In this document: positions 19,211 to 35,022 of the stretch, piece after piece
How positions within the stretch are numbered: position 1 is the stretch's first letter
Layout: each line of letters begins with the position of its first letter
Virus record (IMG/VR): IMGVR_UViG_3300049043_000112
Coordinates: 62,001 to 126,000 of that record
Length of the DNA: 64,000 bases
Strand: one strand, 5' to 3'
The notes under the pieces: model-generated
Told to the model about the DNA's origin: nothing
The model's input: the letters and a program-made list of their open reading frames with translations, nothing else
Databases searched by the model: none
Program-made: the position numbers and the translations under genes

Positions 19211-19651
19211 ATGAAAGAAATTGCAGGGCATCCTGGTTACTTTGTCACAGAAGATGGCAGAGTGTTTAGTAACAAATCAGGAGAGTTAAAAGAAAGAAAG
19301 CAGTATAAACATAAAAAAGGATATAAGATAATCTGCATCAATACGGAGGGAAAACAATATACTTTGAGGGTGCATAGATTAGTTGCAGAATTGTATATCC
19401 CAAATCCAAACAATTTACCTCAAGTTAATCATAAAGATGAGGTCAAAGATAATAACCACATTAACAACTTAGAGTGGTGTGATAATCAATACAACTGCGA
19501 ATATTCACACGCAAAGACGCATAAAATAAAAACCCCCACAGGTGAAACTGTAGAGGTCTTTAATATCAGAAAGTTTTGTAGAGAGAATAACCTTCACTCT
19601 GGTGCTCTATACACTAGAGGAAAGAATAAAGGTTATTCTCTCATTAATTAG
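19211..19651 (+). mobile_element. Free-standing NUMOD4-HNH homing endonuclease
   Basis: GYFVTEDGRVFS, VHRLVAELYIPNPNNLPQVNHKDEVKDNNHINNLEW. It is an AT-rich gene inserted antisense into the GC-rich island. Confidence 0.9.
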
Positions 19652-30689: not shown

Positions 30690-31148
30690 TCATTTCGCAT
30701 ACAGATATCCTCCCGCCCAATCAGCATTCTCAAGCAACCATTCACGCTGCTCAATGATGCGGAGATCGTAGCGAACACCCTTAGCAGGTGCTTTCCAACT
30801 GGCGCTTTTGTAAACTTGACCAGTCTTCTTATCCACAAAAGCGTGGACAGAACGGGAACCATTTGCAACCATAATAATTTTGTGATACTTACGACCCGTT
30901 TCAGGGTAGAACTCATAATCACAAACACCATTCTTCAGGTCTTGAATACATGCGAGATGATAGGTCTCTTCGCAATCAGTGATAATATCTTCCAGACTTT
31001 TCAAAGAACGCTGGTGCGACTTGATGCTGTAATCAATGTAATTCTGACGCAGTGCCTCACACAGAGCATAGGTGTGACCCAGAACTGCCTCTGCGATGTT
31101 CTTCCGTGCCTCTGCAGTGGCGGCGTAGTCAGCGAAGGTGGTGGTCAT
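30690..31148 (-). CDS. Conserved T4-like phage hypothetical protein
   Basis: GRKYHKII..SVHAFVDKKTGQVYKSASWKAPAKGVRYDL; early promoter and palindrome at 31170/31205. Confidence 0.75.
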   Translation of the reverse strand: MTTTFADYAATAEARKNIAEAVLGHTYALCEALRQNYIDYSIKSHQRSLKSLEDIITDCEETYHLACIQDLKNGVCDYEFYPETGRKYHKIIMVANGSRSVHAFVDKKTGQVYKSASWKAPAKGVRYDLRIIEQREWLLENADWAGGYLYAK

Positions 31149-31223
31149 TGCTTGGTTGCGTATGAACGTATTATAGGAGCATACAGGGGCATTTCAGGAA
31201 GCCCTGTGCCACCCGTTAAACTG

Positions 31224-31625
31224 TCACATAAACGCTTCCACGCCAACAGGATTGCCGAAACTATAGTCATATTCAAGGGCGTTGGCACAGACAAAATGTG
31301 GATGTTTTACGTCAACACCAAGACGTTCACACAATTCCTTATGATTATCCTCCATAAGTTCCACAGCGTACAGCATATTATCCAAAATATGTTCGGAAGA
31401 GTGATATTCCTTGAGTTTTTCGTACAGTGCAACCATAAAGTTGCCAGAACCAGCAGAATTATCAAGAAATGTGCTTTTAGGATTTTTCAGCACATCTTCT
31501 GGAATTTCAGATACCATCTTGGCGCAAAGTTCTGCAGGAGTGAATACTTCACCAGTTGCATCAATCCTGTCATCAGAGCGTTCAATCTCCGACCCGACCA
31601 TTTCATTATGCTTATTCTTGGACAT
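31224..31625 (-). CDS. Short N6-adenine methyltransferase subunit (SAM-binding motifs only)
   Basis: TGEVFTPAELC (motif X), FLDNSAGSGNF (motif I), YAVELMEDN (motif II), VCANAL (motif III); no NPPY. Confidence 0.8.
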   Translation of the reverse strand: MSKNKHNEMVGSEIERSDDRIDATGEVFTPAELCAKMVSEIPEDVLKNPKSTFLDNSAGSGNFMVALYEKLKEYHSSEHILDNMLYAVELMEDNHKELCERLGVDVKHPHFVCANALEYDYSFGNPVGVEAFM

Positions 31626-31627
31626 AC

Positions 31628-32623
31628 TTAGGATACCTCATTAAAAGGCGATGGAATTTTTTTGAACAGATCTTTAGTAGGATGAAAAGAAGTCATATTC
31701 ATCTTAACAAGTTCCTTAACCTTATCAGACATAAGGTAATCTCTAAGAATGACTGCATCCTCGATTGTATCCGTTTTTAGGAACACAACACTGAAAGTAA
31801 CAGATGCTTCATAAGGTTTGATCATAATTTTACCCAGTCCACCCCACTCTGCTGCCATATTCATAATGACACCGTGCTGATTGCGACCAGTTTCTTCTAA
31901 ACCAGGTTCAATATACCTAATTTTTGGAGTCTCTTCTGTCCCAAGAATTTCAACAATCGGAACACCACCAGGATGATCTTTGATTGCATTCCGATACAGA
32001 TTTCCGTTAAAATACCTGTGTGCCATATTGTTAGAAACTTGATCAATAAAGTTAGGATTGTCCAACTTGATCAAGTCTTTCTCTGTCAGATTTTTTTCAA
32101 TAACTGTACCGTCCTTATAAGTAACCTTGCAAGGTCCTTTGTGATTTTTATCCCAGGTTACAACACAAGTTTGAGTATTCTGAACAGTCGGAAACGTTTC
32201 TGGCGGAAGGTATTGAATAGAAACCAAATTCCCAGAACTGAACAGTTTTTTTCTAAAATTAGAGGAAGATTTCATAAAGTGTTTTGCCCTAATAATTAGA
32301 GAAACTCTGTCAGCAATTTCTGTGCTTTTCGTAAAGAAATCAGAATCCAAATTATTAGAACAACCACCCGTATTAGCACCACTAACTTTAGAGCGATCGG
32401 AATATGGAGGGTTACCGATTACAACATTAAACCTCATACCTTTATCCGCAAGTTCTAAAAATTCCTGAAAATCTACAACTACATTTATTTTATCATTTAT
32501 CTGATTGATTGTATAGATGTGCCTAGGATCATTCTCCCAAACCCAAATATTCTCTGGTGAATATTTTTTAAGGGCAACCATCGAATGAGTACCCTTAGGG
32601 TCTCCAATAATCAGGAGGTTCAT
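31628..32623 (-). CDS. Eco57I-like N6-adenine methyltransferase catalytic/target-recognition subunit
   Basis: FNVVIGNPPY (motif IV), ETFPTVQ..TCVVTW; only a degenerate motif I (LLIIGDPKG). Confidence 0.8.
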   Translation of the reverse strand: MNLLIIGDPKGTHSMVALKKYSPENIWVWENDPRHIYTINQINDKINVVVDFQEFLELADKGMRFNVVIGNPPYSDRSKVSGANTGGCSNNLDSDFFTKSTEIADRVSLIIRAKHFMKSSSNFRKKLFSSGNLVSIQYLPPETFPTVQNTQTCVVTWDKNHKGPCKVTYKDGTVIEKNLTEKDLIKLDNPNFIDQVSNNMAHRYFNGNLYRNAIKDHPGGVPIVEILGTEETPKIRYIEPGLEETGRNQHGVIMNMAAEWGGLGKIMIKPYEASVTFSVVFLKTDTIEDAVILRDYLMSDKVKELVKMNMTSFHPTKDLFKKIPSPFNEVS

Positions 32624-34740
32624 ACGTTCAACATTTCTTCAAACAAGTCTACTGGAATACCCTGCTGAGTCTGCGCCGACTCGGACAGTTTATCAAGTGT
32701 CACAACCTTGTTGTTCTGCATAGAATGTTGTACGTCAACATATGCTTTACTGATTCGGGTACTCAACGATTTACGATTGATAACTCCATACTCCAATGCC
32801 ATCTGCAGGATGTTTTCATCGTCAAGAGTTACTGGTTGATAATGAGCAGACTCAAGAACAGAGTCGATGTTGTTCATAACTTCACCAGAATTGATGGCGT
32901 GAAAAAGAACAAGAGGAATTCTCTCCAAAATTGCTTGAATGGTTTCAATCTTTTGGTAGATTTCATCTTTGACAGACTTTTGCAGTTCGTTTACCCGTTT
33001 CTTGTTACTTTTACCGTTAGCATTATTATCATTCAGTTGAACAGATTTTGCAACGTTAGAGTTGACTGCTGCAAGACTTAAGTTGAAGTCAAGTTCACGA
33101 AGTTTGCTGTAGTCAAGAGAAGTAGCAAGACTAGACACAAGACGAATAGCATTACCAACATCTGCTGCCAGAATTTCATTCACTTTCTCAGCAGAAAGAG
33201 TTTCAAATCCCTGATTCCATTCACTGATGGCAACATAATCCGTGAAATCATATTCCGCAACTTCAGGAGAAGTGTCACAAGCAGCAACAAATGTCTGCCG
33301 AAGTGATTCCAAACAACGTTGCGGGCAGAAGTCAATTACAGTCCAGTCTTTATCAGAAGAACCACCACGGAAAGCAAATTGTGTCCAGAATTCGATACTA
33401 CTGCCCTCTGCACAGTTGATAATCGTATCAACTTCAGAAGCAGTTACACCAAGAACATTAGCGGTACGTGTCAGAATGCAAGAACCGTTAGGATTTTGTG
33501 CGATATGGAGGTTGATATCCTCAGCATCTTTACCAGTGTCTCCAGTAACAACAAGAGGAGCAAACCTTGTACCTTCCATATACTTGCTAATAGCATGGCA
33601 AGCAGCAACAGAGGGCAACGTCATATAAAGATGAGTTGAATCCTTCAGCAGACGATGTTGAGGGCGAAGAGTACGTTGAGTTTCGAAATGATTGGTAACA
33701 AAATCTTGAACCAAAGAAGGTTCTACAAAATTACCTTCATCATCAACTCGGAACAGATTCTTCATAGCATCAGGGTCATCTCCAAAGAGTTCTTGATACT
33801 GTGCAGAAGCATATTTTGCAAGAACAACCTTCATAGAGGGGCGGTTAATCAGACCACGCTTCTTGTCGAGTTGTTCCTCATAGTAAGAGTAAATGTAACG
33901 GTTGGAATTGTTAAAATCCCAAACCATTTTATATGCAGTTCCAGTTACATACAGAACCTTACAATCATAAGAATTTTGAAGTTCAGTCCACTGCTTTGAA
34001 CCATATCCAATATGTGCCTCATCATAAACAATCAGGTCAATATTGCAAGGAAGGTTTGTAAGTTTACGACTCTGAATACAACCCCAGAGAACCAGTTGTT
34101 TATCAGTCTTCAGATACTTCTCAATCTCCTGCTCATAACCTTTCTTATTCAGGTCAATGTAGACCAGATTCTCAAAGTTCTTAAAATTAGAATCTTCACG
34201 CCAAGATTGTTCTGGCGACTTGTATCGGGAGACCACAAGTGTTACCTTGACACCACTTTCTACAATGGCACTCAGCACCATCATAGATTTACCAGCACGA
34301 CACTTTGCAAACAGCAGAAACTCTTTCCACTCTTCCCAGTTTGAAAGAACTTTAGTTACAAATTCTTGCTGGTGCTTATAGAGTTCCCGAGTCTCTGCAA
34401 CTTTATTGACAGATTGGGCACCTTGATACTGCTCCAGTTCATAAGCAGCATCTTCCACAGTGATAAAGAACCACTCACGGTCCTTATCATCACGAGTTTT
34501 ATTATACCCTTGCTTCAGAAGATGCTTGTGAAACTCCTTATCACCAAATGTAGTTTCATACACACCCTTAGTAATAAGTTGCTGAGGGTTAGAAGTTGTA
34601 TCTTGCTGATTGATACGGTCTTCTGCTTCTTCTTGTTGCGTGTCTCCAATCTTCAGCATCGGCACACGACCAAGTTCAACCTGATCCTCGTAGTGTGCTT
34701 TAGTTGAATAAAAATAGATTTTCTTTTGAAGAGTAATCAT
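32620..34740 (-). CDS. T5orf172/GIY-YIG-like nuclease fused to an SF2 helicase (restriction-subunit-like)
   Basis: N-terminal MLKIGDT..EDRINQQ..DKEFHKHL..REWF; FAKCRAGKS (Walker A), VYDEAH (Walker B), VTGTA, QFAFRGGS. Confidence 0.75.
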   Translation of the reverse strand: MITLQKKIYFYSTKAHYEDQVELGRVPMLKIGDTQQEEAEDRINQQDTTSNPQQLITKGVYETTFGDKEFHKHLLKQGYNKTRDDKDREWFFITVEDAAYELEQYQGAQSVNKVAETRELYKHQQEFVTKVLSNWEEWKEFLLFAKCRAGKSMMVLSAIVESGVKVTLVVSRYKSPEQSWREDSNFKNFENLVYIDLNKKGYEQEIEKYLKTDKQLVLWGCIQSRKLTNLPCNIDLIVYDEAHIGYGSKQWTELQNSYDCKVLYVTGTAYKMVWDFNNSNRYIYSYYEEQLDKKRGLINRPSMKVVLAKYASAQYQELFGDDPDAMKNLFRVDDEGNFVEPSLVQDFVTNHFETQRTLRPQHRLLKDSTHLYMTLPSVAACHAISKYMEGTRFAPLVVTGDTGKDAEDINLHIAQNPNGSCILTRTANVLGVTASEVDTIINCAEGSSIEFWTQFAFRGGSSDKDWTVIDFCPQRCLESLRQTFVAACDTSPEVAEYDFTDYVAISEWNQGFETLSAEKVNEILAADVGNAIRLVSSLATSLDYSKLRELDFNLSLAAVNSNVAKSVQLNDNNANGKSNKKRVNELQKSVKDEIYQKIETIQAILERIPLVLFHAINSGEVMNNIDSVLESAHYQPVTLDDENILQMALEYGVINRKSLSTRISKAYVDVQHSMQNNKVVTLDKLSESAQTQQGIPVDLFEEMLNV

Positions 34741-35022
34741 GATTCAGTAAACAAATTCAGAAGCAAAATCAATAGTGTCGTCGGATTCAAGGTAACCCAT
34801 CCAATCTTGTGGATTGGTCTCATAGATTGCAATTTCCCGCAGTTCATCAATCAGTTCAGACAGATCCATAAGAAACCCTCAGTTACTTGTTTATTATAGC
34901 AGAAAACCCGCCTTAAGGGCGGGTCGTGTGCCAGTTCTCAGACTGCCAGTGCTCCAGAAGGAATCTCTACACCTTCAAGGTAAGATTCGTGCCAGTCACA
35001 AGTATCGTAGCACAACCAACCT

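What the first reader, a model, noticed from the sequence alone, without database searches (positions are those of the whole stretch)
31224..34933. Early-expressed phage restriction-modification-like trio with a split, reverse-ordered methyltransferase
Seen: an operon behind an early palindrome (34927) encodes a T5orf172-like nuclease-SF2 helicase (706 aa), a 331-aa subunit with NPPY but a degenerate motif I, and a 133-aa subunit with intact motifs X/I/II/III but no NPPY. Known: gamma-class N6 MTases carry X-I-II-III before IV in one chain. Inference: the two small genes may complement in trans as a split MTase whose SAM-binding half is encoded after the catalytic half. The helicase tail (GIPVDLFEEML) resembles motif X, which suggests a fragmented Type ISP/IIG-like ancestor. 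The module could protect phage DNA, attack host DNA or exclude competing phages.
Basis: partly seen in the sequence, partly recalled or inferred. Interest (0 to 1): 0.65.

Follow-up and report, generated by a model that had tools for sequence, protein, structure and literature searches.

The report
Phage methylase with separate SAM-binding subunit
A lake cyanophage carries a restriction-modification-like operon in which the cofactor-binding half of the DNA adenine methylase appears to be a separate 133-residue protein, and that small protein turns out to be a widespread companion of many different methylase cassettes in T4-like phages.

Summary
Three tightly packed minus-strand genes encode a T5orf172/DEAH-helicase protein (706 aa), a TaqI-like NPPY methylase with a target-recognition domain (331 aa), and a 133-aa protein that holds only motifs X-I-II-III.

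- In 68 of 68 informative viral contigs, the 133-aa gene follows an Eco57I-type methylase gene. None of the 70 such methylase ORFs has a canonical motif I, while 77 of 78 copies of the 133-aa gene do.
- Some partner genes begin exactly at strand beta-4 (M-x-F-x-x-I-G-NPPY) and have no SAM-binding half at all.
- Aeromonas phage Aeh1 ORF084c is a natural single-chain fusion, [NPPY half]-[133-like half], in the same order as the window.
- A complex prediction scored 0.78 against a best control of 0.00. It lays beta-1 of the 133-aa protein against beta-4 of the 331-aa protein.

The helicase tail is motif X of the 331-aa methylase, because natural fusions are collinear across the junction.

One caveat remains. 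The 331-aa protein also carries its own N-terminal pseudo-half, which folds in cis with high confidence, so its need for the 133-aa protein is inferred and not shown. No methylation or restriction has been measured. I rate this a new variant of a known kind.

The parts
34899..34931 (-). GC-rich hairpin (core CCCGCC-cttaa-GGCGGG) followed by a T-run. It looks like the terminator of the upstream gene.
34892..34899 (-). CTATAATA, a -10-like promoter box that recurs in intergenic positions on this strand (28092, 29067, 30497, 31169, 34892).
   Evidence: (10 matches against 2.7 expected)
34744..34869 (-). 41-aa acidic ORF, the first ORF of the unit. It has no family hit.
32620..34740 (-). 706-aa protein with a T5orf172 (GIY-YIG-like) domain, an SF2 DEAH ATPase and a C-terminal coupler.
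   Evidence: (phrog_22930, E 3e-225)
34447..34716 (-). T5orf172 domain (residues 9-98), the putative nuclease.
   Evidence: 25.2 bits, cut-off 20
33934..34386 (-). ResIII / SF2 helicase core, first lobe (residues 119-269), with RAGKS and DEAH.
32623..32667 (-). Helicase tail QQGIPVDLFEEMLNV, which is the motif X-like helix of the downstream methylase. It is conserved as [IL]P.xL..[ML] in relatives and runs on into the methylase in fused forms.
32620..32623 (-). ATGA stop/start overlap between the 706-aa and 331-aa genes.
31628..32623 (-). 331-aa TaqI-like N6-adenine methylase: pseudo-half, NPPY core and target-recognition domain.
32438..32623 (-). N-terminal extension (residues 1-62). It is predicted as beta1-alphaA-beta2-alphaB-beta3-alphaC, with non-canonical motif I GDPKGTHS, motif II VWEND and motif III VDF.
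32402..32413 (-). NPPY (motif IV, residues 71-74). It is preceded by the conserved Met63, which aligns with the start Met of the short partner genes.
31631..32176 (-). C-terminal region (about residues 150-331), the putative target-recognition domain. It is swapped among relatives that share the N-terminal part.
31224..31625 (-). 133-aa canonical SAM-binding half (motifs X, I, II, III) of the split methylase.
   Evidence: (phrog_4376)
31536..31544 (-). Motif X FTP (residues 28-30) of the 133-aa protein.
31437..31469 (-). Motif I FLDNSAGSGNF (residues 53-63) of the 133-aa protein. Its beta-1 strand (51-55) is the strand predicted to pair with beta-4 of the 331-aa protein.
31169..31176 (-). Next CTATAATA box after a short hairpin. 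It marks the downstream end of the unit and the start of the DUF7717 gene's unit.

Best explanation
The locus is a phage-borne module that resembles a Type ISP restriction-modification enzyme, built from three polypeptides.

- The 331-aa protein supplies sequence recognition through its C-terminal domain and the adenine pocket (NPPY).
- The 133-aa protein is the real S-adenosylmethionine-binding half (motifs X-I-II-III). It docks with its beta-1 strand against beta-4 of the 331-aa protein, which completes the Rossmann sheet and the active site, so the pair would methylate adenines in phage DNA.
- The 706-aa protein (T5orf172 nuclease-like domain plus DEAH translocase) is coupled to the 331-aa protein through its C-terminal motif X-like tail and the 331-aa protein's N-terminal pseudo-half. 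This is the same chain that is continuous in related phages. It would use the same recognition domain to attack unmethylated DNA of the host or of competing phages.

What is shown here by computation: the domain content, the gene linkage, the natural fusions and the predicted interface. What is inferred: SAM binding, methylation, ATP-driven translocation, cleavage and the biological target.
For: Domain content:
- Pfam, PHROG and NCBIfam assignments.
- The AlphaFold2 model of the 331-aa protein has pLDDT 91.3. Its best structural matches are M.TaqI (E 2e-10), then CamA, BseCI, PglX, BpuSI and MmeI.

Linkage:
- In all 68 IMG/VR loci with at least 1.5 kb of upstream sequence, the 133-aa gene has an Eco57I-like methylase ORF on the same strand within 2.7 kb. 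In 38 of them the two genes abut or overlap. This holds across at least six different architectures.
- Every 331-like gene whose contig reaches far enough downstream has a 133 homologue there: five loci from three proteins, two of them near-duplicates.

Complementary motifs:
- None of 70 neighbouring methylase ORFs has a canonical [DENS]x3GxG motif I, while 77 of 78 of the 133 homologues do.
- Short partners of 186-271 aa start exactly at M-x-F-x-x-I-G-NPPY. Examples are P-SSM2 gp036 followed by gp037, and metagenome loci L004 and L006.

Natural fusion:
- Aeh1 ORF084c residues 1-268 match the 331 family from Met63 to its end (probability 97.9%, E 3.6e-13).
- Its residues 283-369 match the 133 family (probability 97.6%, E 3.7e-12).

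Complex prediction:
- ipSAE was 0.78 (runs 0.80, 0.78, 0.78) and the best of 3 controls was 0.00. That mark was reached by 58 of 80 solved complexes and by 2 of 110 mismatched pairs. These counts hold only roughly here, because my own alignments were used and SAM rode along.
- The runs agree in at least 92% of contacts, and the partner's pLDDT is at least 86.
- The interface is 331 residues 62-74 and 95-156 with 133 residues 24-30 and 51-58, plus the C-terminal YDYSF. The tightest pairs are 331:66-70 with 133:51-55.
- Within the same method, the 133-aa protein's pLDDT is 87-88 with the 331-aa protein and 71 with an unrelated protein.

Helicase coupling:
- MA01-type proteins of 1015-1177 aa are collinear across the junction, with about 10 linker residues between the tail and the pseudo-half.
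- The tail motif is conserved in 17 split loci.

Operon structure.

Own genome: the 331-aa gene is the only Eco57I-family gene in the 236-kb genome. It is therefore the only candidate partner of that family for the 133-aa protein there.
Against: - The 331-aa protein has its own beta1-beta3 segment, which AlphaFold2 places in the canonical position with pLDDT 85-95. This segment keeps a motif II glutamate and a motif III Asp-Phe as in M.TaqI, and TaqI's own motif I is also glycine-poor (from my own knowledge of TaqI). The 331-aa protein might therefore bind SAM on its own.
- The complex model has to displace this segment. A structure predictor may simply be rebuilding the familiar methylase fold from the piece with the better motifs.
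- The 133-aa gene is also kept next to methylases that look full-length (Bellamy type), so its role may be more than filling a gap.
- The T5orf172 hit is weak (E 2.5e-5) and no nuclease activity is known for this protein.
- PADLOC finds no known defence system.
- There is no expression, methylome or biochemical evidence.
Confidence: 0.6

Rival explanations
1. The 331-aa protein, with the helicase tail as motif X, is a self-sufficient TaqI-like methylase. The 133-aa protein is a conserved neighbour with another job, such as a SAM sensor, a regulator, or a partner only for the bare NPPY halves found in other phages.
For: AlphaFold2 folds a complete Rossmann domain in cis and TaqI is the best structural match. 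In the window-type proteins the motif II glutamate is kept and the motif III aspartate mostly kept. The 133-aa gene also sits beside apparently full-length methylases.
Against: None of 70 neighbouring methylase ORFs has a canonical motif I, while the 133 family almost always does. The cis segment has been lost outright in several lineages, but the 133-aa gene was found downstream of every 331-like gene that could be checked. The complex prediction gives the canonical interface with the window's own full-length protein. No other Eco57I-type partner exists in this genome.
Confidence: 0.2
2. The helicase-methylase pair is a mobile or recombination-related cassette and not a restriction enzyme. 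T5orf172 would act as a homing or recombination nuclease, and the helicase would act in replication or repair. Methylation would serve only to evade host restriction.
For: The cassette is present in some ACG-2014f isolates and absent in others, and lies on either side of the 133-aa gene. T5orf172 proteins have been proposed to act in recombination (PMC7824862). PADLOC finds no restriction or defence system.
Against: The domain order nuclease-SF2 ATPase-methylase-recognition domain, in single chains of 1015-1177 aa in relatives, is that of Type ISP enzymes. Recognition domains are swapped among close relatives, as in restriction-modification systems. The helicase is physically fused to the methylase, which a replication helicase would not need.
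Confidence: 0.12
3. The 133-aa ORF is a decayed fragment of a methylase gene with no function.
For: It holds only half of a methylase domain, and AlphaFold2 folds it poorly on its own (pLDDT 60).
Against: There are 2673 clusters, and the 120 listed hits are 132-150 aa long with dozens of invariant residues, including the N- and C-terminal tails. It is tightly coupled to the upstream gene in six architectures. It occurs as an in-frame fused domain in Aeh1.
Confidence: 0.02

Closest known systems
Type ISP restriction-modification enzymes (LlaGI, LlaBIII)
   Same: The domain order is the same: nuclease, SF2 ATPase, gamma-type N6-adenine methylase, then C-terminal recognition domain. Relatives of the window's proteins carry helicase, methylase and recognition domain in one chain of about 1015-1177 aa.
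   Different: The nuclease-like domain is T5orf172/GIY-YIG-like and not Mrr/PD-(D/E)xK. The chain is cut between motif X and motif I. The methylase's motif I is non-canonical, and a separate 133-aa SAM-binding protein is always encoded alongside. The system is phage-encoded. No sequence match to solved Type ISP chains was found.
M.TaqI and other gamma-class Eco57I-family methylases (CamA, BseCI, PglX, MmeI, BpuSI)
   Same: These are the best structural matches of the 331-aa model. They share NPPY, a two-domain layout, and a glycine-poor motif I as in TaqI.
   Different: These enzymes hold X-I-II-III-IV in one chain and need no extra subunit. Here motif X sits on the helicase, and a second, canonical X-I-II-III set is a separate protein.
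Naturally heterodimeric DNA methylases M.EcoHK31I and M.AquI
   Same: One methylase domain is made of two polypeptides that must associate (PMC2836561, PMC3404938).
   Different: Those are cytosine-5 methylases, cut elsewhere in the fold, and each is a single dedicated pair. Here the enzyme is an N6-adenine methylase cut between motifs III and IV, the small half is shared by many different partners, and the partner often keeps a degenerate copy of the missing half.
Circularly permuted EcoKI-like adenine methylases of large phages, such as Aeromonas phage Aeh1 ORF084c (phrog_11371)
   Same: The motif order is the same, IV...recognition domain...X-I-II-III. Both parts are homologous to the window's 331-aa (from Met63) and 133-aa proteins. 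A permuted EcoKI-like form in jumbo phages is mentioned in PMC7824862.
   Different: Aeh1 has a single chain with no pseudo-half and no helicase. The window has two chains plus a pseudo-half and a helicase-nuclease.
METTL3-METTL14 type pairs of an active and a degenerate methylase domain
   Same: A domain with intact SAM motifs is paired with a homologous domain that has lost them.
   Different: In METTL3-METTL14 each protein is a complete fold, and both SAM binding and catalysis sit in METTL3. Here the SAM-binding and catalytic halves of one fold appear to come from different chains. This is an analogy only.

Membership tests
Type ISP restriction-modification enzyme | Single polypeptide carrying all activities | tested here: not met
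   The window has three ORFs. Fused helicase-methylase forms exist in relatives, but the 133-aa gene is separate there too.
Type ISP restriction-modification enzyme | N-terminal Mrr-like PD-(D/E)xK nuclease | tested here: not met
   The N-terminal domain matches T5orf172/MUG113 of the GIY-YIG clan, not Mrr.
Type ISP restriction-modification enzyme | SF2 helicase-like ATPase between the nuclease and the methylase | tested here: met
   ResIII, 29.2 bits; RAGKS, DEAH and TGT motifs; phrog_16 DNA helicase.
Type ISP restriction-modification enzyme | Gamma-class N6-adenine methylase followed by a C-terminal recognition domain | tested here: met
   Eco57I Pfam hit, NPPY, and a TaqI-like two-domain model. 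Motif I is non-canonical.
Type ISP restriction-modification enzyme | ATP-driven translocation and collision-dependent cleavage of unmodified DNA | not testable with these tools
   This needs biochemistry.
Gamma-class N6-adenine DNA methylase (Eco57I/TaqI type) | Motifs X-I-II-III-IV-V-VIII in one chain with a canonical SAM loop | tested here: not met
   Motif X is on the helicase tail. Motif I is GDPKGTHS. None of 70 relatives has [DENS]x3GxG.
Gamma-class N6-adenine DNA methylase (Eco57I/TaqI type) | NPPY catalytic motif and the Rossmann fold | tested here: met
   N71, P72 and P73 are invariant in 80 sequences. The fold is confirmed.
Split (two-polypeptide) DNA methylase | Two genes that each hold a complementary, non-overlapping part of one methylase domain | tested here: inconclusive
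   This is met cleanly by relatives, for example P-SSM2 gp036+gp037 and L006. In the window the 331-aa protein also keeps a degenerate copy of the 133-aa part.
Split (two-polypeptide) DNA methylase | The two parts occur fused in one chain in some organism | tested here: met
   Aeh1 ORF084c.
Split (two-polypeptide) DNA methylase | Physical association of the two polypeptides | tested here: inconclusive
   This rests on prediction only: score 0.78, best control 0.00, canonical beta-1/beta-4 interface. The model supports binding but does not show it.
Split (two-polypeptide) DNA methylase | Methylation requires both polypeptides | not testable with these tools
   This needs co-expression and methylome sequencing.
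BREX (PglX) or other catalogued defence system | Signature gene set recognised by PADLOC models | tested here: not met
   Only weak domain-level hits were found: PglX E 0.0028, MTase_II and PDC-S57.

The most novel reading that the evidence does not exclude
The 133-aa protein is a universal, exchangeable SAM-binding subunit that switches on whichever NPPY/recognition-domain module a T4-like phage currently carries. In modules that keep a cis pseudo-half tied to a helicase-nuclease, as in the window, the pseudo-half and the 133-aa protein compete for the same beta-4 edge. One recognition domain would then alternate between a restriction state (pseudo-half engaged, no methyl transfer) and a modification state (133-aa protein engaged). 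This would be a new way to balance restriction against modification, and a natural two-piece methylase scaffold.
Probability: 0.2. Interest if true: 0.85.

Novelty: new variant of a known kind. Interest (0 to 1): 0.68.

Why it matters
- The 133-aa family is very common in aquatic phage metagenomes (2673 clusters at 90% identity). It is annotated as hypothetical (phrog_4376, unknown function), and this work gives it a concrete, testable role.
- A natural N6-adenine methylase whose cofactor-binding half is a separate, shared subunit has, as far as my searches reach, only cytosine-5 precedents.
- Such an arrangement would explain how T4-like phages can swap nuclease, helicase and recognition cassettes at one locus while keeping a single constant partner.
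- Software that annotates methylases and predicts methylation motifs would miss or miscall both halves.
- A naturally evolved split adenine methylase would also be a useful scaffold for proximity-dependent methylation tools, which so far rely on cytosine-5 enzymes (PMC2836561).
- If the helicase-nuclease is active, this is a phage-encoded Type ISP-like weapon against host or rival DNA in cyanobacterial populations.

Tried and rejected
- PADLOC and NCBIfam gave only weak domain-level hits and no known system.
- A PDB sequence search of the 706-aa protein found nothing at E <= 0.01.
- AlphaFold2 of the 133-aa protein alone gave pLDDT 60. That is too poor for a fold search, so none was run.
- I guessed from its sequence that the roughly 187-aa protein between the methylase and the 133-aa gene in Bellamy-type loci is an Mrr-like nuclease. 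Neither Pfam nor PDB supports this, so I treat it as unknown.
- The 721-aa protein of locus L004 is not a homologue of the helicase.
- I considered an internal translation start at Met63 of the 331-aa gene. That Met aligns with the start of the short partner genes, and a Met sits at -8 from NPPY in 61 of 70 relatives. However, the only Shine-Dalgarno-like stretch (AAAGG) lies 2 nt from the ATG, so I make no claim.
- I considered a zinc site formed by the conserved His and Cys residues of the 133-aa protein. They are not kept in the more distant homologues, so I dropped the idea.
- No partner lacking a pseudo-half was found in the window's own genome. The tool warns that an empty answer shows nothing.
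- On reads, only assembled contigs of lake and aquatic DNA metagenomes hold the locus and there is no RNA run. Expression and timing could not be addressed, and depth figures were not used.
- Literature searches found no description of this family or of a split adenine methylase.
- The large representative protein search was not needed and was not run. No non-standard genetic code was used.

Full report
**What is in the sequence**

The window is part of a 236,016-bp viral record that CheckV rates as complete, and it corresponds to bases 62001-126000 of that record. Its genes include a ferredoxin-dependent bilin reductase, a Dam methylase, DUF7717 and DUF6267. Its closest relatives are Kyanoviridae cyanophages. 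The public runs that hold the locus are lake-water and aquatic DNA metagenomes.

Four co-directional ORFs lie on the minus strand:
- 41 aa at 34744-34869
- 706 aa at 32620-34740
- 331 aa at 31628-32623
- 133 aa at 31224-31625

Upstream there is a GC-rich hairpin with a T-run, followed by CTATAATA. A second CTATAATA follows the 133-aa gene. This octamer occurs 10 times in the window against 2.7 expected, and none of 100 shuffles reached 10. Five of the copies lie between genes on this strand between 28 and 35 kb, so it is a plausible promoter box. The timing of expression was not testable.

The 706-aa and 331-aa genes overlap by ATGA. The 331-aa and 133-aa genes are 2 nt apart, with GAGG upstream of the 133 start.

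**Domain content**

The 706-aa protein has a T5orf172 domain and a ResIII/SF2 core, both above Pfam's cut-offs, with RAGKS, DEAH and TGT motifs. It belongs to phrog_22930 (E 3e-225).

The 331-aa protein matches the Eco57I family and has NPPY at residues 71-74. Its AlphaFold2 model is confident (pLDDT 91.3) and is most like M.TaqI, followed by CamA, BseCI, PglX, BpuSI and MmeI. Residues 1-62 are predicted as beta1-alphaA-beta2-alphaB-beta3-alphaC ahead of beta-4/NPPY. The protein therefore has a complete Rossmann fold, but where motif I should be it reads GDPKGTHS.

The 133-aa protein matches only the first part of N6-adenine methylase profiles: Pfam N6_Mtase positions 24-89 and NCBIfam TIGR02987 positions 2-64. 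It carries FTP, FLDNSAGSGNF and a motif II glutamate.

**The 133-aa protein is a large, conserved, stand-alone family**

A word-based search found 2673 clusters, and the 120 listed hits are 132-150 aa long. There are many invariant residues, including the N-terminal KNKHN...R..R segment and the C-terminal YDYSFG tail. PHROGs lists the family as phrog_4376, function unknown. It is not a decayed fragment.

**Its neighbours**

I fetched 80 IMG/VR loci with a homologue of the 133-aa gene and classified the same-strand ORFs. All 68 loci with at least 1.5 kb of upstream sequence have an Eco57I-like methylase ORF within 2.7 kb upstream. In 38 of them that ORF abuts or overlaps the 133-aa gene.

The architectures differ widely:
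- Window type: T5orf172-helicase (about 700 aa), then methylase (310-364 aa), then the 133-aa gene.
- MA01 type: helicase and methylase fused into one protein (1015-1177 aa), then the 133-aa gene.
- Bellamy type: a roughly 470-aa helicase, then methylase (365-445 aa), then a roughly 187-aa protein with no family hit, then the 133-aa gene.
- P-SSM2 type: a bare NPPY half (186-194 aa), then the 133-aa gene.
- Two further types, with partners of about 240 aa and of 413-534 aa.

In annotated genomes the same patterns appear in S-CAM7, MA01, ACG-2014f, P-SSM2, Bellamy and S-SKS1. In one ACG-2014f isolate the helicase-methylase cassette lies downstream of the 133-aa gene, and in most other isolates this cassette is absent.

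The reverse test also holds. Every 331-like gene whose contig reaches far enough downstream has a 133 homologue there: five loci from three proteins, two of them near-duplicates, one with an uncalled copy and one with an extra NPPY gene in between.

These 80 loci are the ones closest to the query and include near-duplicates: 62 unique methylases and 67 unique 133-aa sequences.

**Complementary motifs**

None of the 70 neighbouring methylase ORFs has a canonical [DENS]x3GxG motif I in the 110 residues before NPPY. By contrast, 77 of 78 homologues of the 133-aa protein have it.

The segments before NPPY appear related to one another by eye. They share a hydrophobic strand, D/E-P/A-x-G, a helix, G-Y/F-x-N-I-x-V-x-E-N/D and so on, so they look like a degenerate copy of the SAM-binding half.

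In several lineages this copy is gone. These proteins start exactly at M-[KRH]-F-x-x-I-I-G-NPPY. They include the 186-194-aa P-SSM2-type proteins and 262-273-aa forms of the window's own 331 family. Such proteins cannot bind SAM by themselves, and the 133-aa gene sits beside them.
- In locus L006 the order is 135 aa, then 271 aa, then 193 aa.
- In locus L004 one 138-aa gene sits among three NPPY-start genes.

Met63 of the window's protein aligns with their start codon. A Met at that position is kept in 61 of 70 relatives.

**A natural fusion**

Aeromonas phage Aeh1 ORF084c (415 aa) begins MHFDYMIANPPY and ends with FFTP...FFEPSCGDGN. In profile comparison:
- Its residues 1-268 align with the 331 family from Met63 to the C-terminus (probability 97.9%, E 3.6e-13).
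- Its residues 283-369 align with residues 13-102 of the 133 family (probability 97.6%, E 3.7e-12).

The window's gene order, catalytic part first and SAM part second, is therefore the order of a circularly permuted single-chain relative. The two window proteins are the two halves of such an enzyme.

Klebsiella phage PKO111 shows a further variant: gp114 (a GIY-YIG domain plus NPPF, 495 aa) is followed by a 153-aa homologue of the 133-aa protein.

**Predicted complex**

The full-length 331-aa protein, the 133-aa protein and SAM were folded together. The tool's verdict is that the model supports binding but does not show it.
- The score was 0.78 and the best of 3 controls was 0.00.
- That mark was reached by 58 of 80 solved complexes and by 2 of 110 mismatched pairs. 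These counts hold only roughly here, because my own alignments were used and a ligand rode along.
- The runs agree in at least 92% of contacts, and the partner's pLDDT is at least 86.

The interface is the canonical one. Residues 51-55 of the 133-aa protein (beta-1, just before the motif I loop) lie against residues 66-70 of the 331-aa protein (beta-4). Motif X (residues 24-30) lies near N71 of NPPY, and the conserved YDYSF tail also makes contact. No residue of the 331-aa protein's own N-terminal 61 residues is in the confident interface, so the model displaces the cis pseudo-half.

Within the same method, the 133-aa protein's pLDDT is 87-88 with the 331-aa protein and 71 with an unrelated protein.

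The caveat is important. This is fold completion of a very familiar domain, and a predictor may prefer the piece with the better motifs whatever happens in the cell.

**The helicase-methylase junction**

In MA01-type proteins the chain runs helicase, then ...Q-I-P-S-K-L-F-I-D-M, then about 10 linker residues, then L-A-I-V-Y-D-P-V-G-L-H-S, then NPPY.

The window's helicase ends ...G-I-P-V-D-L-F-E-E-M-L-N-V, and the 331-aa protein starts M-N-L-L-I-I-G-D-P-K-G-T-H-S. The tail has the same pattern as motif X of the 133 family (F-T-P-x-E-L-x-x-x-M-V).

The break recurs in 17 loci with different overlaps, and the tail motif is conserved. A contig of run X1 spans the ATGA junction without an indel, though that run may be the window's own source sample. 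The evidence does not say whether fusion or fission came first.

**Most likely mechanism (inferred)**

The 331-aa protein reads the DNA sequence and flips the target adenine into the NPPY pocket. The 133-aa protein brings SAM and completes the active site. The 706-aa protein, tethered through its tail and the pseudo-half, translocates along unmethylated DNA and cuts it, as Type ISP enzymes do. Phage DNA would be protected by its own methylation.

The idea that DNA modification lets phages attack host DNA is discussed for large phages in PMC7824862.

My probabilities are:
- About 0.8 that the 133 family is the SAM-binding subunit of NPPY/recognition-domain partners in general.
- About 0.65 that it serves the 331-aa protein in this phage.
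- About 0.5 that the helicase protein makes the set a true restriction enzyme.

**Rivals**

The main rival is that the 331-aa protein works alone. Its pseudo-half keeps the motif II glutamate and the motif III Asp-Phe, and TaqI itself has a glycine-poor motif I. This rival does not explain two things: why the canonical half is always kept next door, and why the cis half can be lost.

A second rival is that the cassette is a mobile or recombination element and not a restriction enzyme.

A more novel reading is that the cis pseudo-half and the 133-aa protein compete for beta-4 and so switch the enzyme between restriction and modification.

**Comparison with known systems and novelty**

The set works like a Type ISP enzyme but fails two of its defining features: it is not a single chain, and it lacks an Mrr-type nuclease.

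Natural two-polypeptide methylases are known for cytosine-5 enzymes (M.EcoHK31I, PMC2836561; M.AquI, mentioned in PMC3404938). Permuted EcoKI-like adenine methylases in large phages are mentioned in PMC7824862.

I found no description of a split N6-adenine methylase with a shared small SAM-binding subunit. The library does not cover subscription journals or REBASE, so a prior description cannot be excluded. I rate this a new variant of a known kind.

**Limits**

All evidence is computational. No RNA data, methylome or biochemistry was available.

Noticed in passing
window:16001-20000: This stretch has G+C of 0.52-0.61 inside a genome of 0.30-0.43 G+C. It has few long ORFs, no tRNA, no Rfam hit and no tandem repeat. 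An HNH/NUMOD4 homing-endonuclease-like ORF lies at 19211-19651, just below Pfam's cut-offs. It could be a foreign insertion or an intron-like element.
   Followed up: partly
window:32853: One contig of run X1 (depth about 10) lacks one base here, inside the helicase gene near codon 629. That would shift the frame before the motif X tail. The window's frame is the one conserved in homologues. This is either an assembly error or a frameshifted variant in the population.
   Followed up: partly
window:35376-35942: A second, unrelated adenine methylase (Pfam Dam, PF05869, E 3e-19) lies just upstream of the unit on the same strand. The phage would therefore have at least two methylation activities.
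   Followed up: no
window:36238-36876: A ferredoxin-dependent bilin reductase gene (PF05996, E 4e-26) is present. It is a typical cyanophage auxiliary metabolic gene.
   Followed up: no
window:20449-21417 and 30690-31148: DUF6267 and DUF7717 genes are present. In other cyanophages these families lie directly downstream of the 133-aa gene. Here DUF7717 is adjacent, but DUF6267 is 10 kb away, beyond the GC-rich stretch.
   Followed up: no
L004:6812-7156: A 114-aa ORF matches only the first 77 of the 253 positions of the D12-class adenine methylase profile, and it sits next to an NPPY-start gene. It may be another methylase encoded in pieces.
   Followed up: no
L008:2436-2999, L010:3485-4087 and 24 IMG/VR loci: In Bellamy-type loci a conserved protein of about 187-200 aa sits between the methylase and the 133-aa gene. 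It has no Pfam or PDB sequence match. From its position I guess it is the nuclease of that variant, but this is unverified.
   Followed up: partly
L098:991-2926 (Klebsiella phage PKO111): gp114 joins a LEM-3-like GIY-YIG domain to an NPPF methylase part, and it is followed, with an overlap, by a 153-aa homologue of the 133-aa protein. The small subunit therefore also occurs in enterobacterial T4-like phages.
   Followed up: partly
window:34728-34950: Contigs from several aquatic metagenomes pile up on the 41-aa ORF and the promoter region but break off at about 34793 and 34882 into unlike sequence (loose ends). This suggests a recombination boundary at the upstream edge of the cassette.
   Followed up: no
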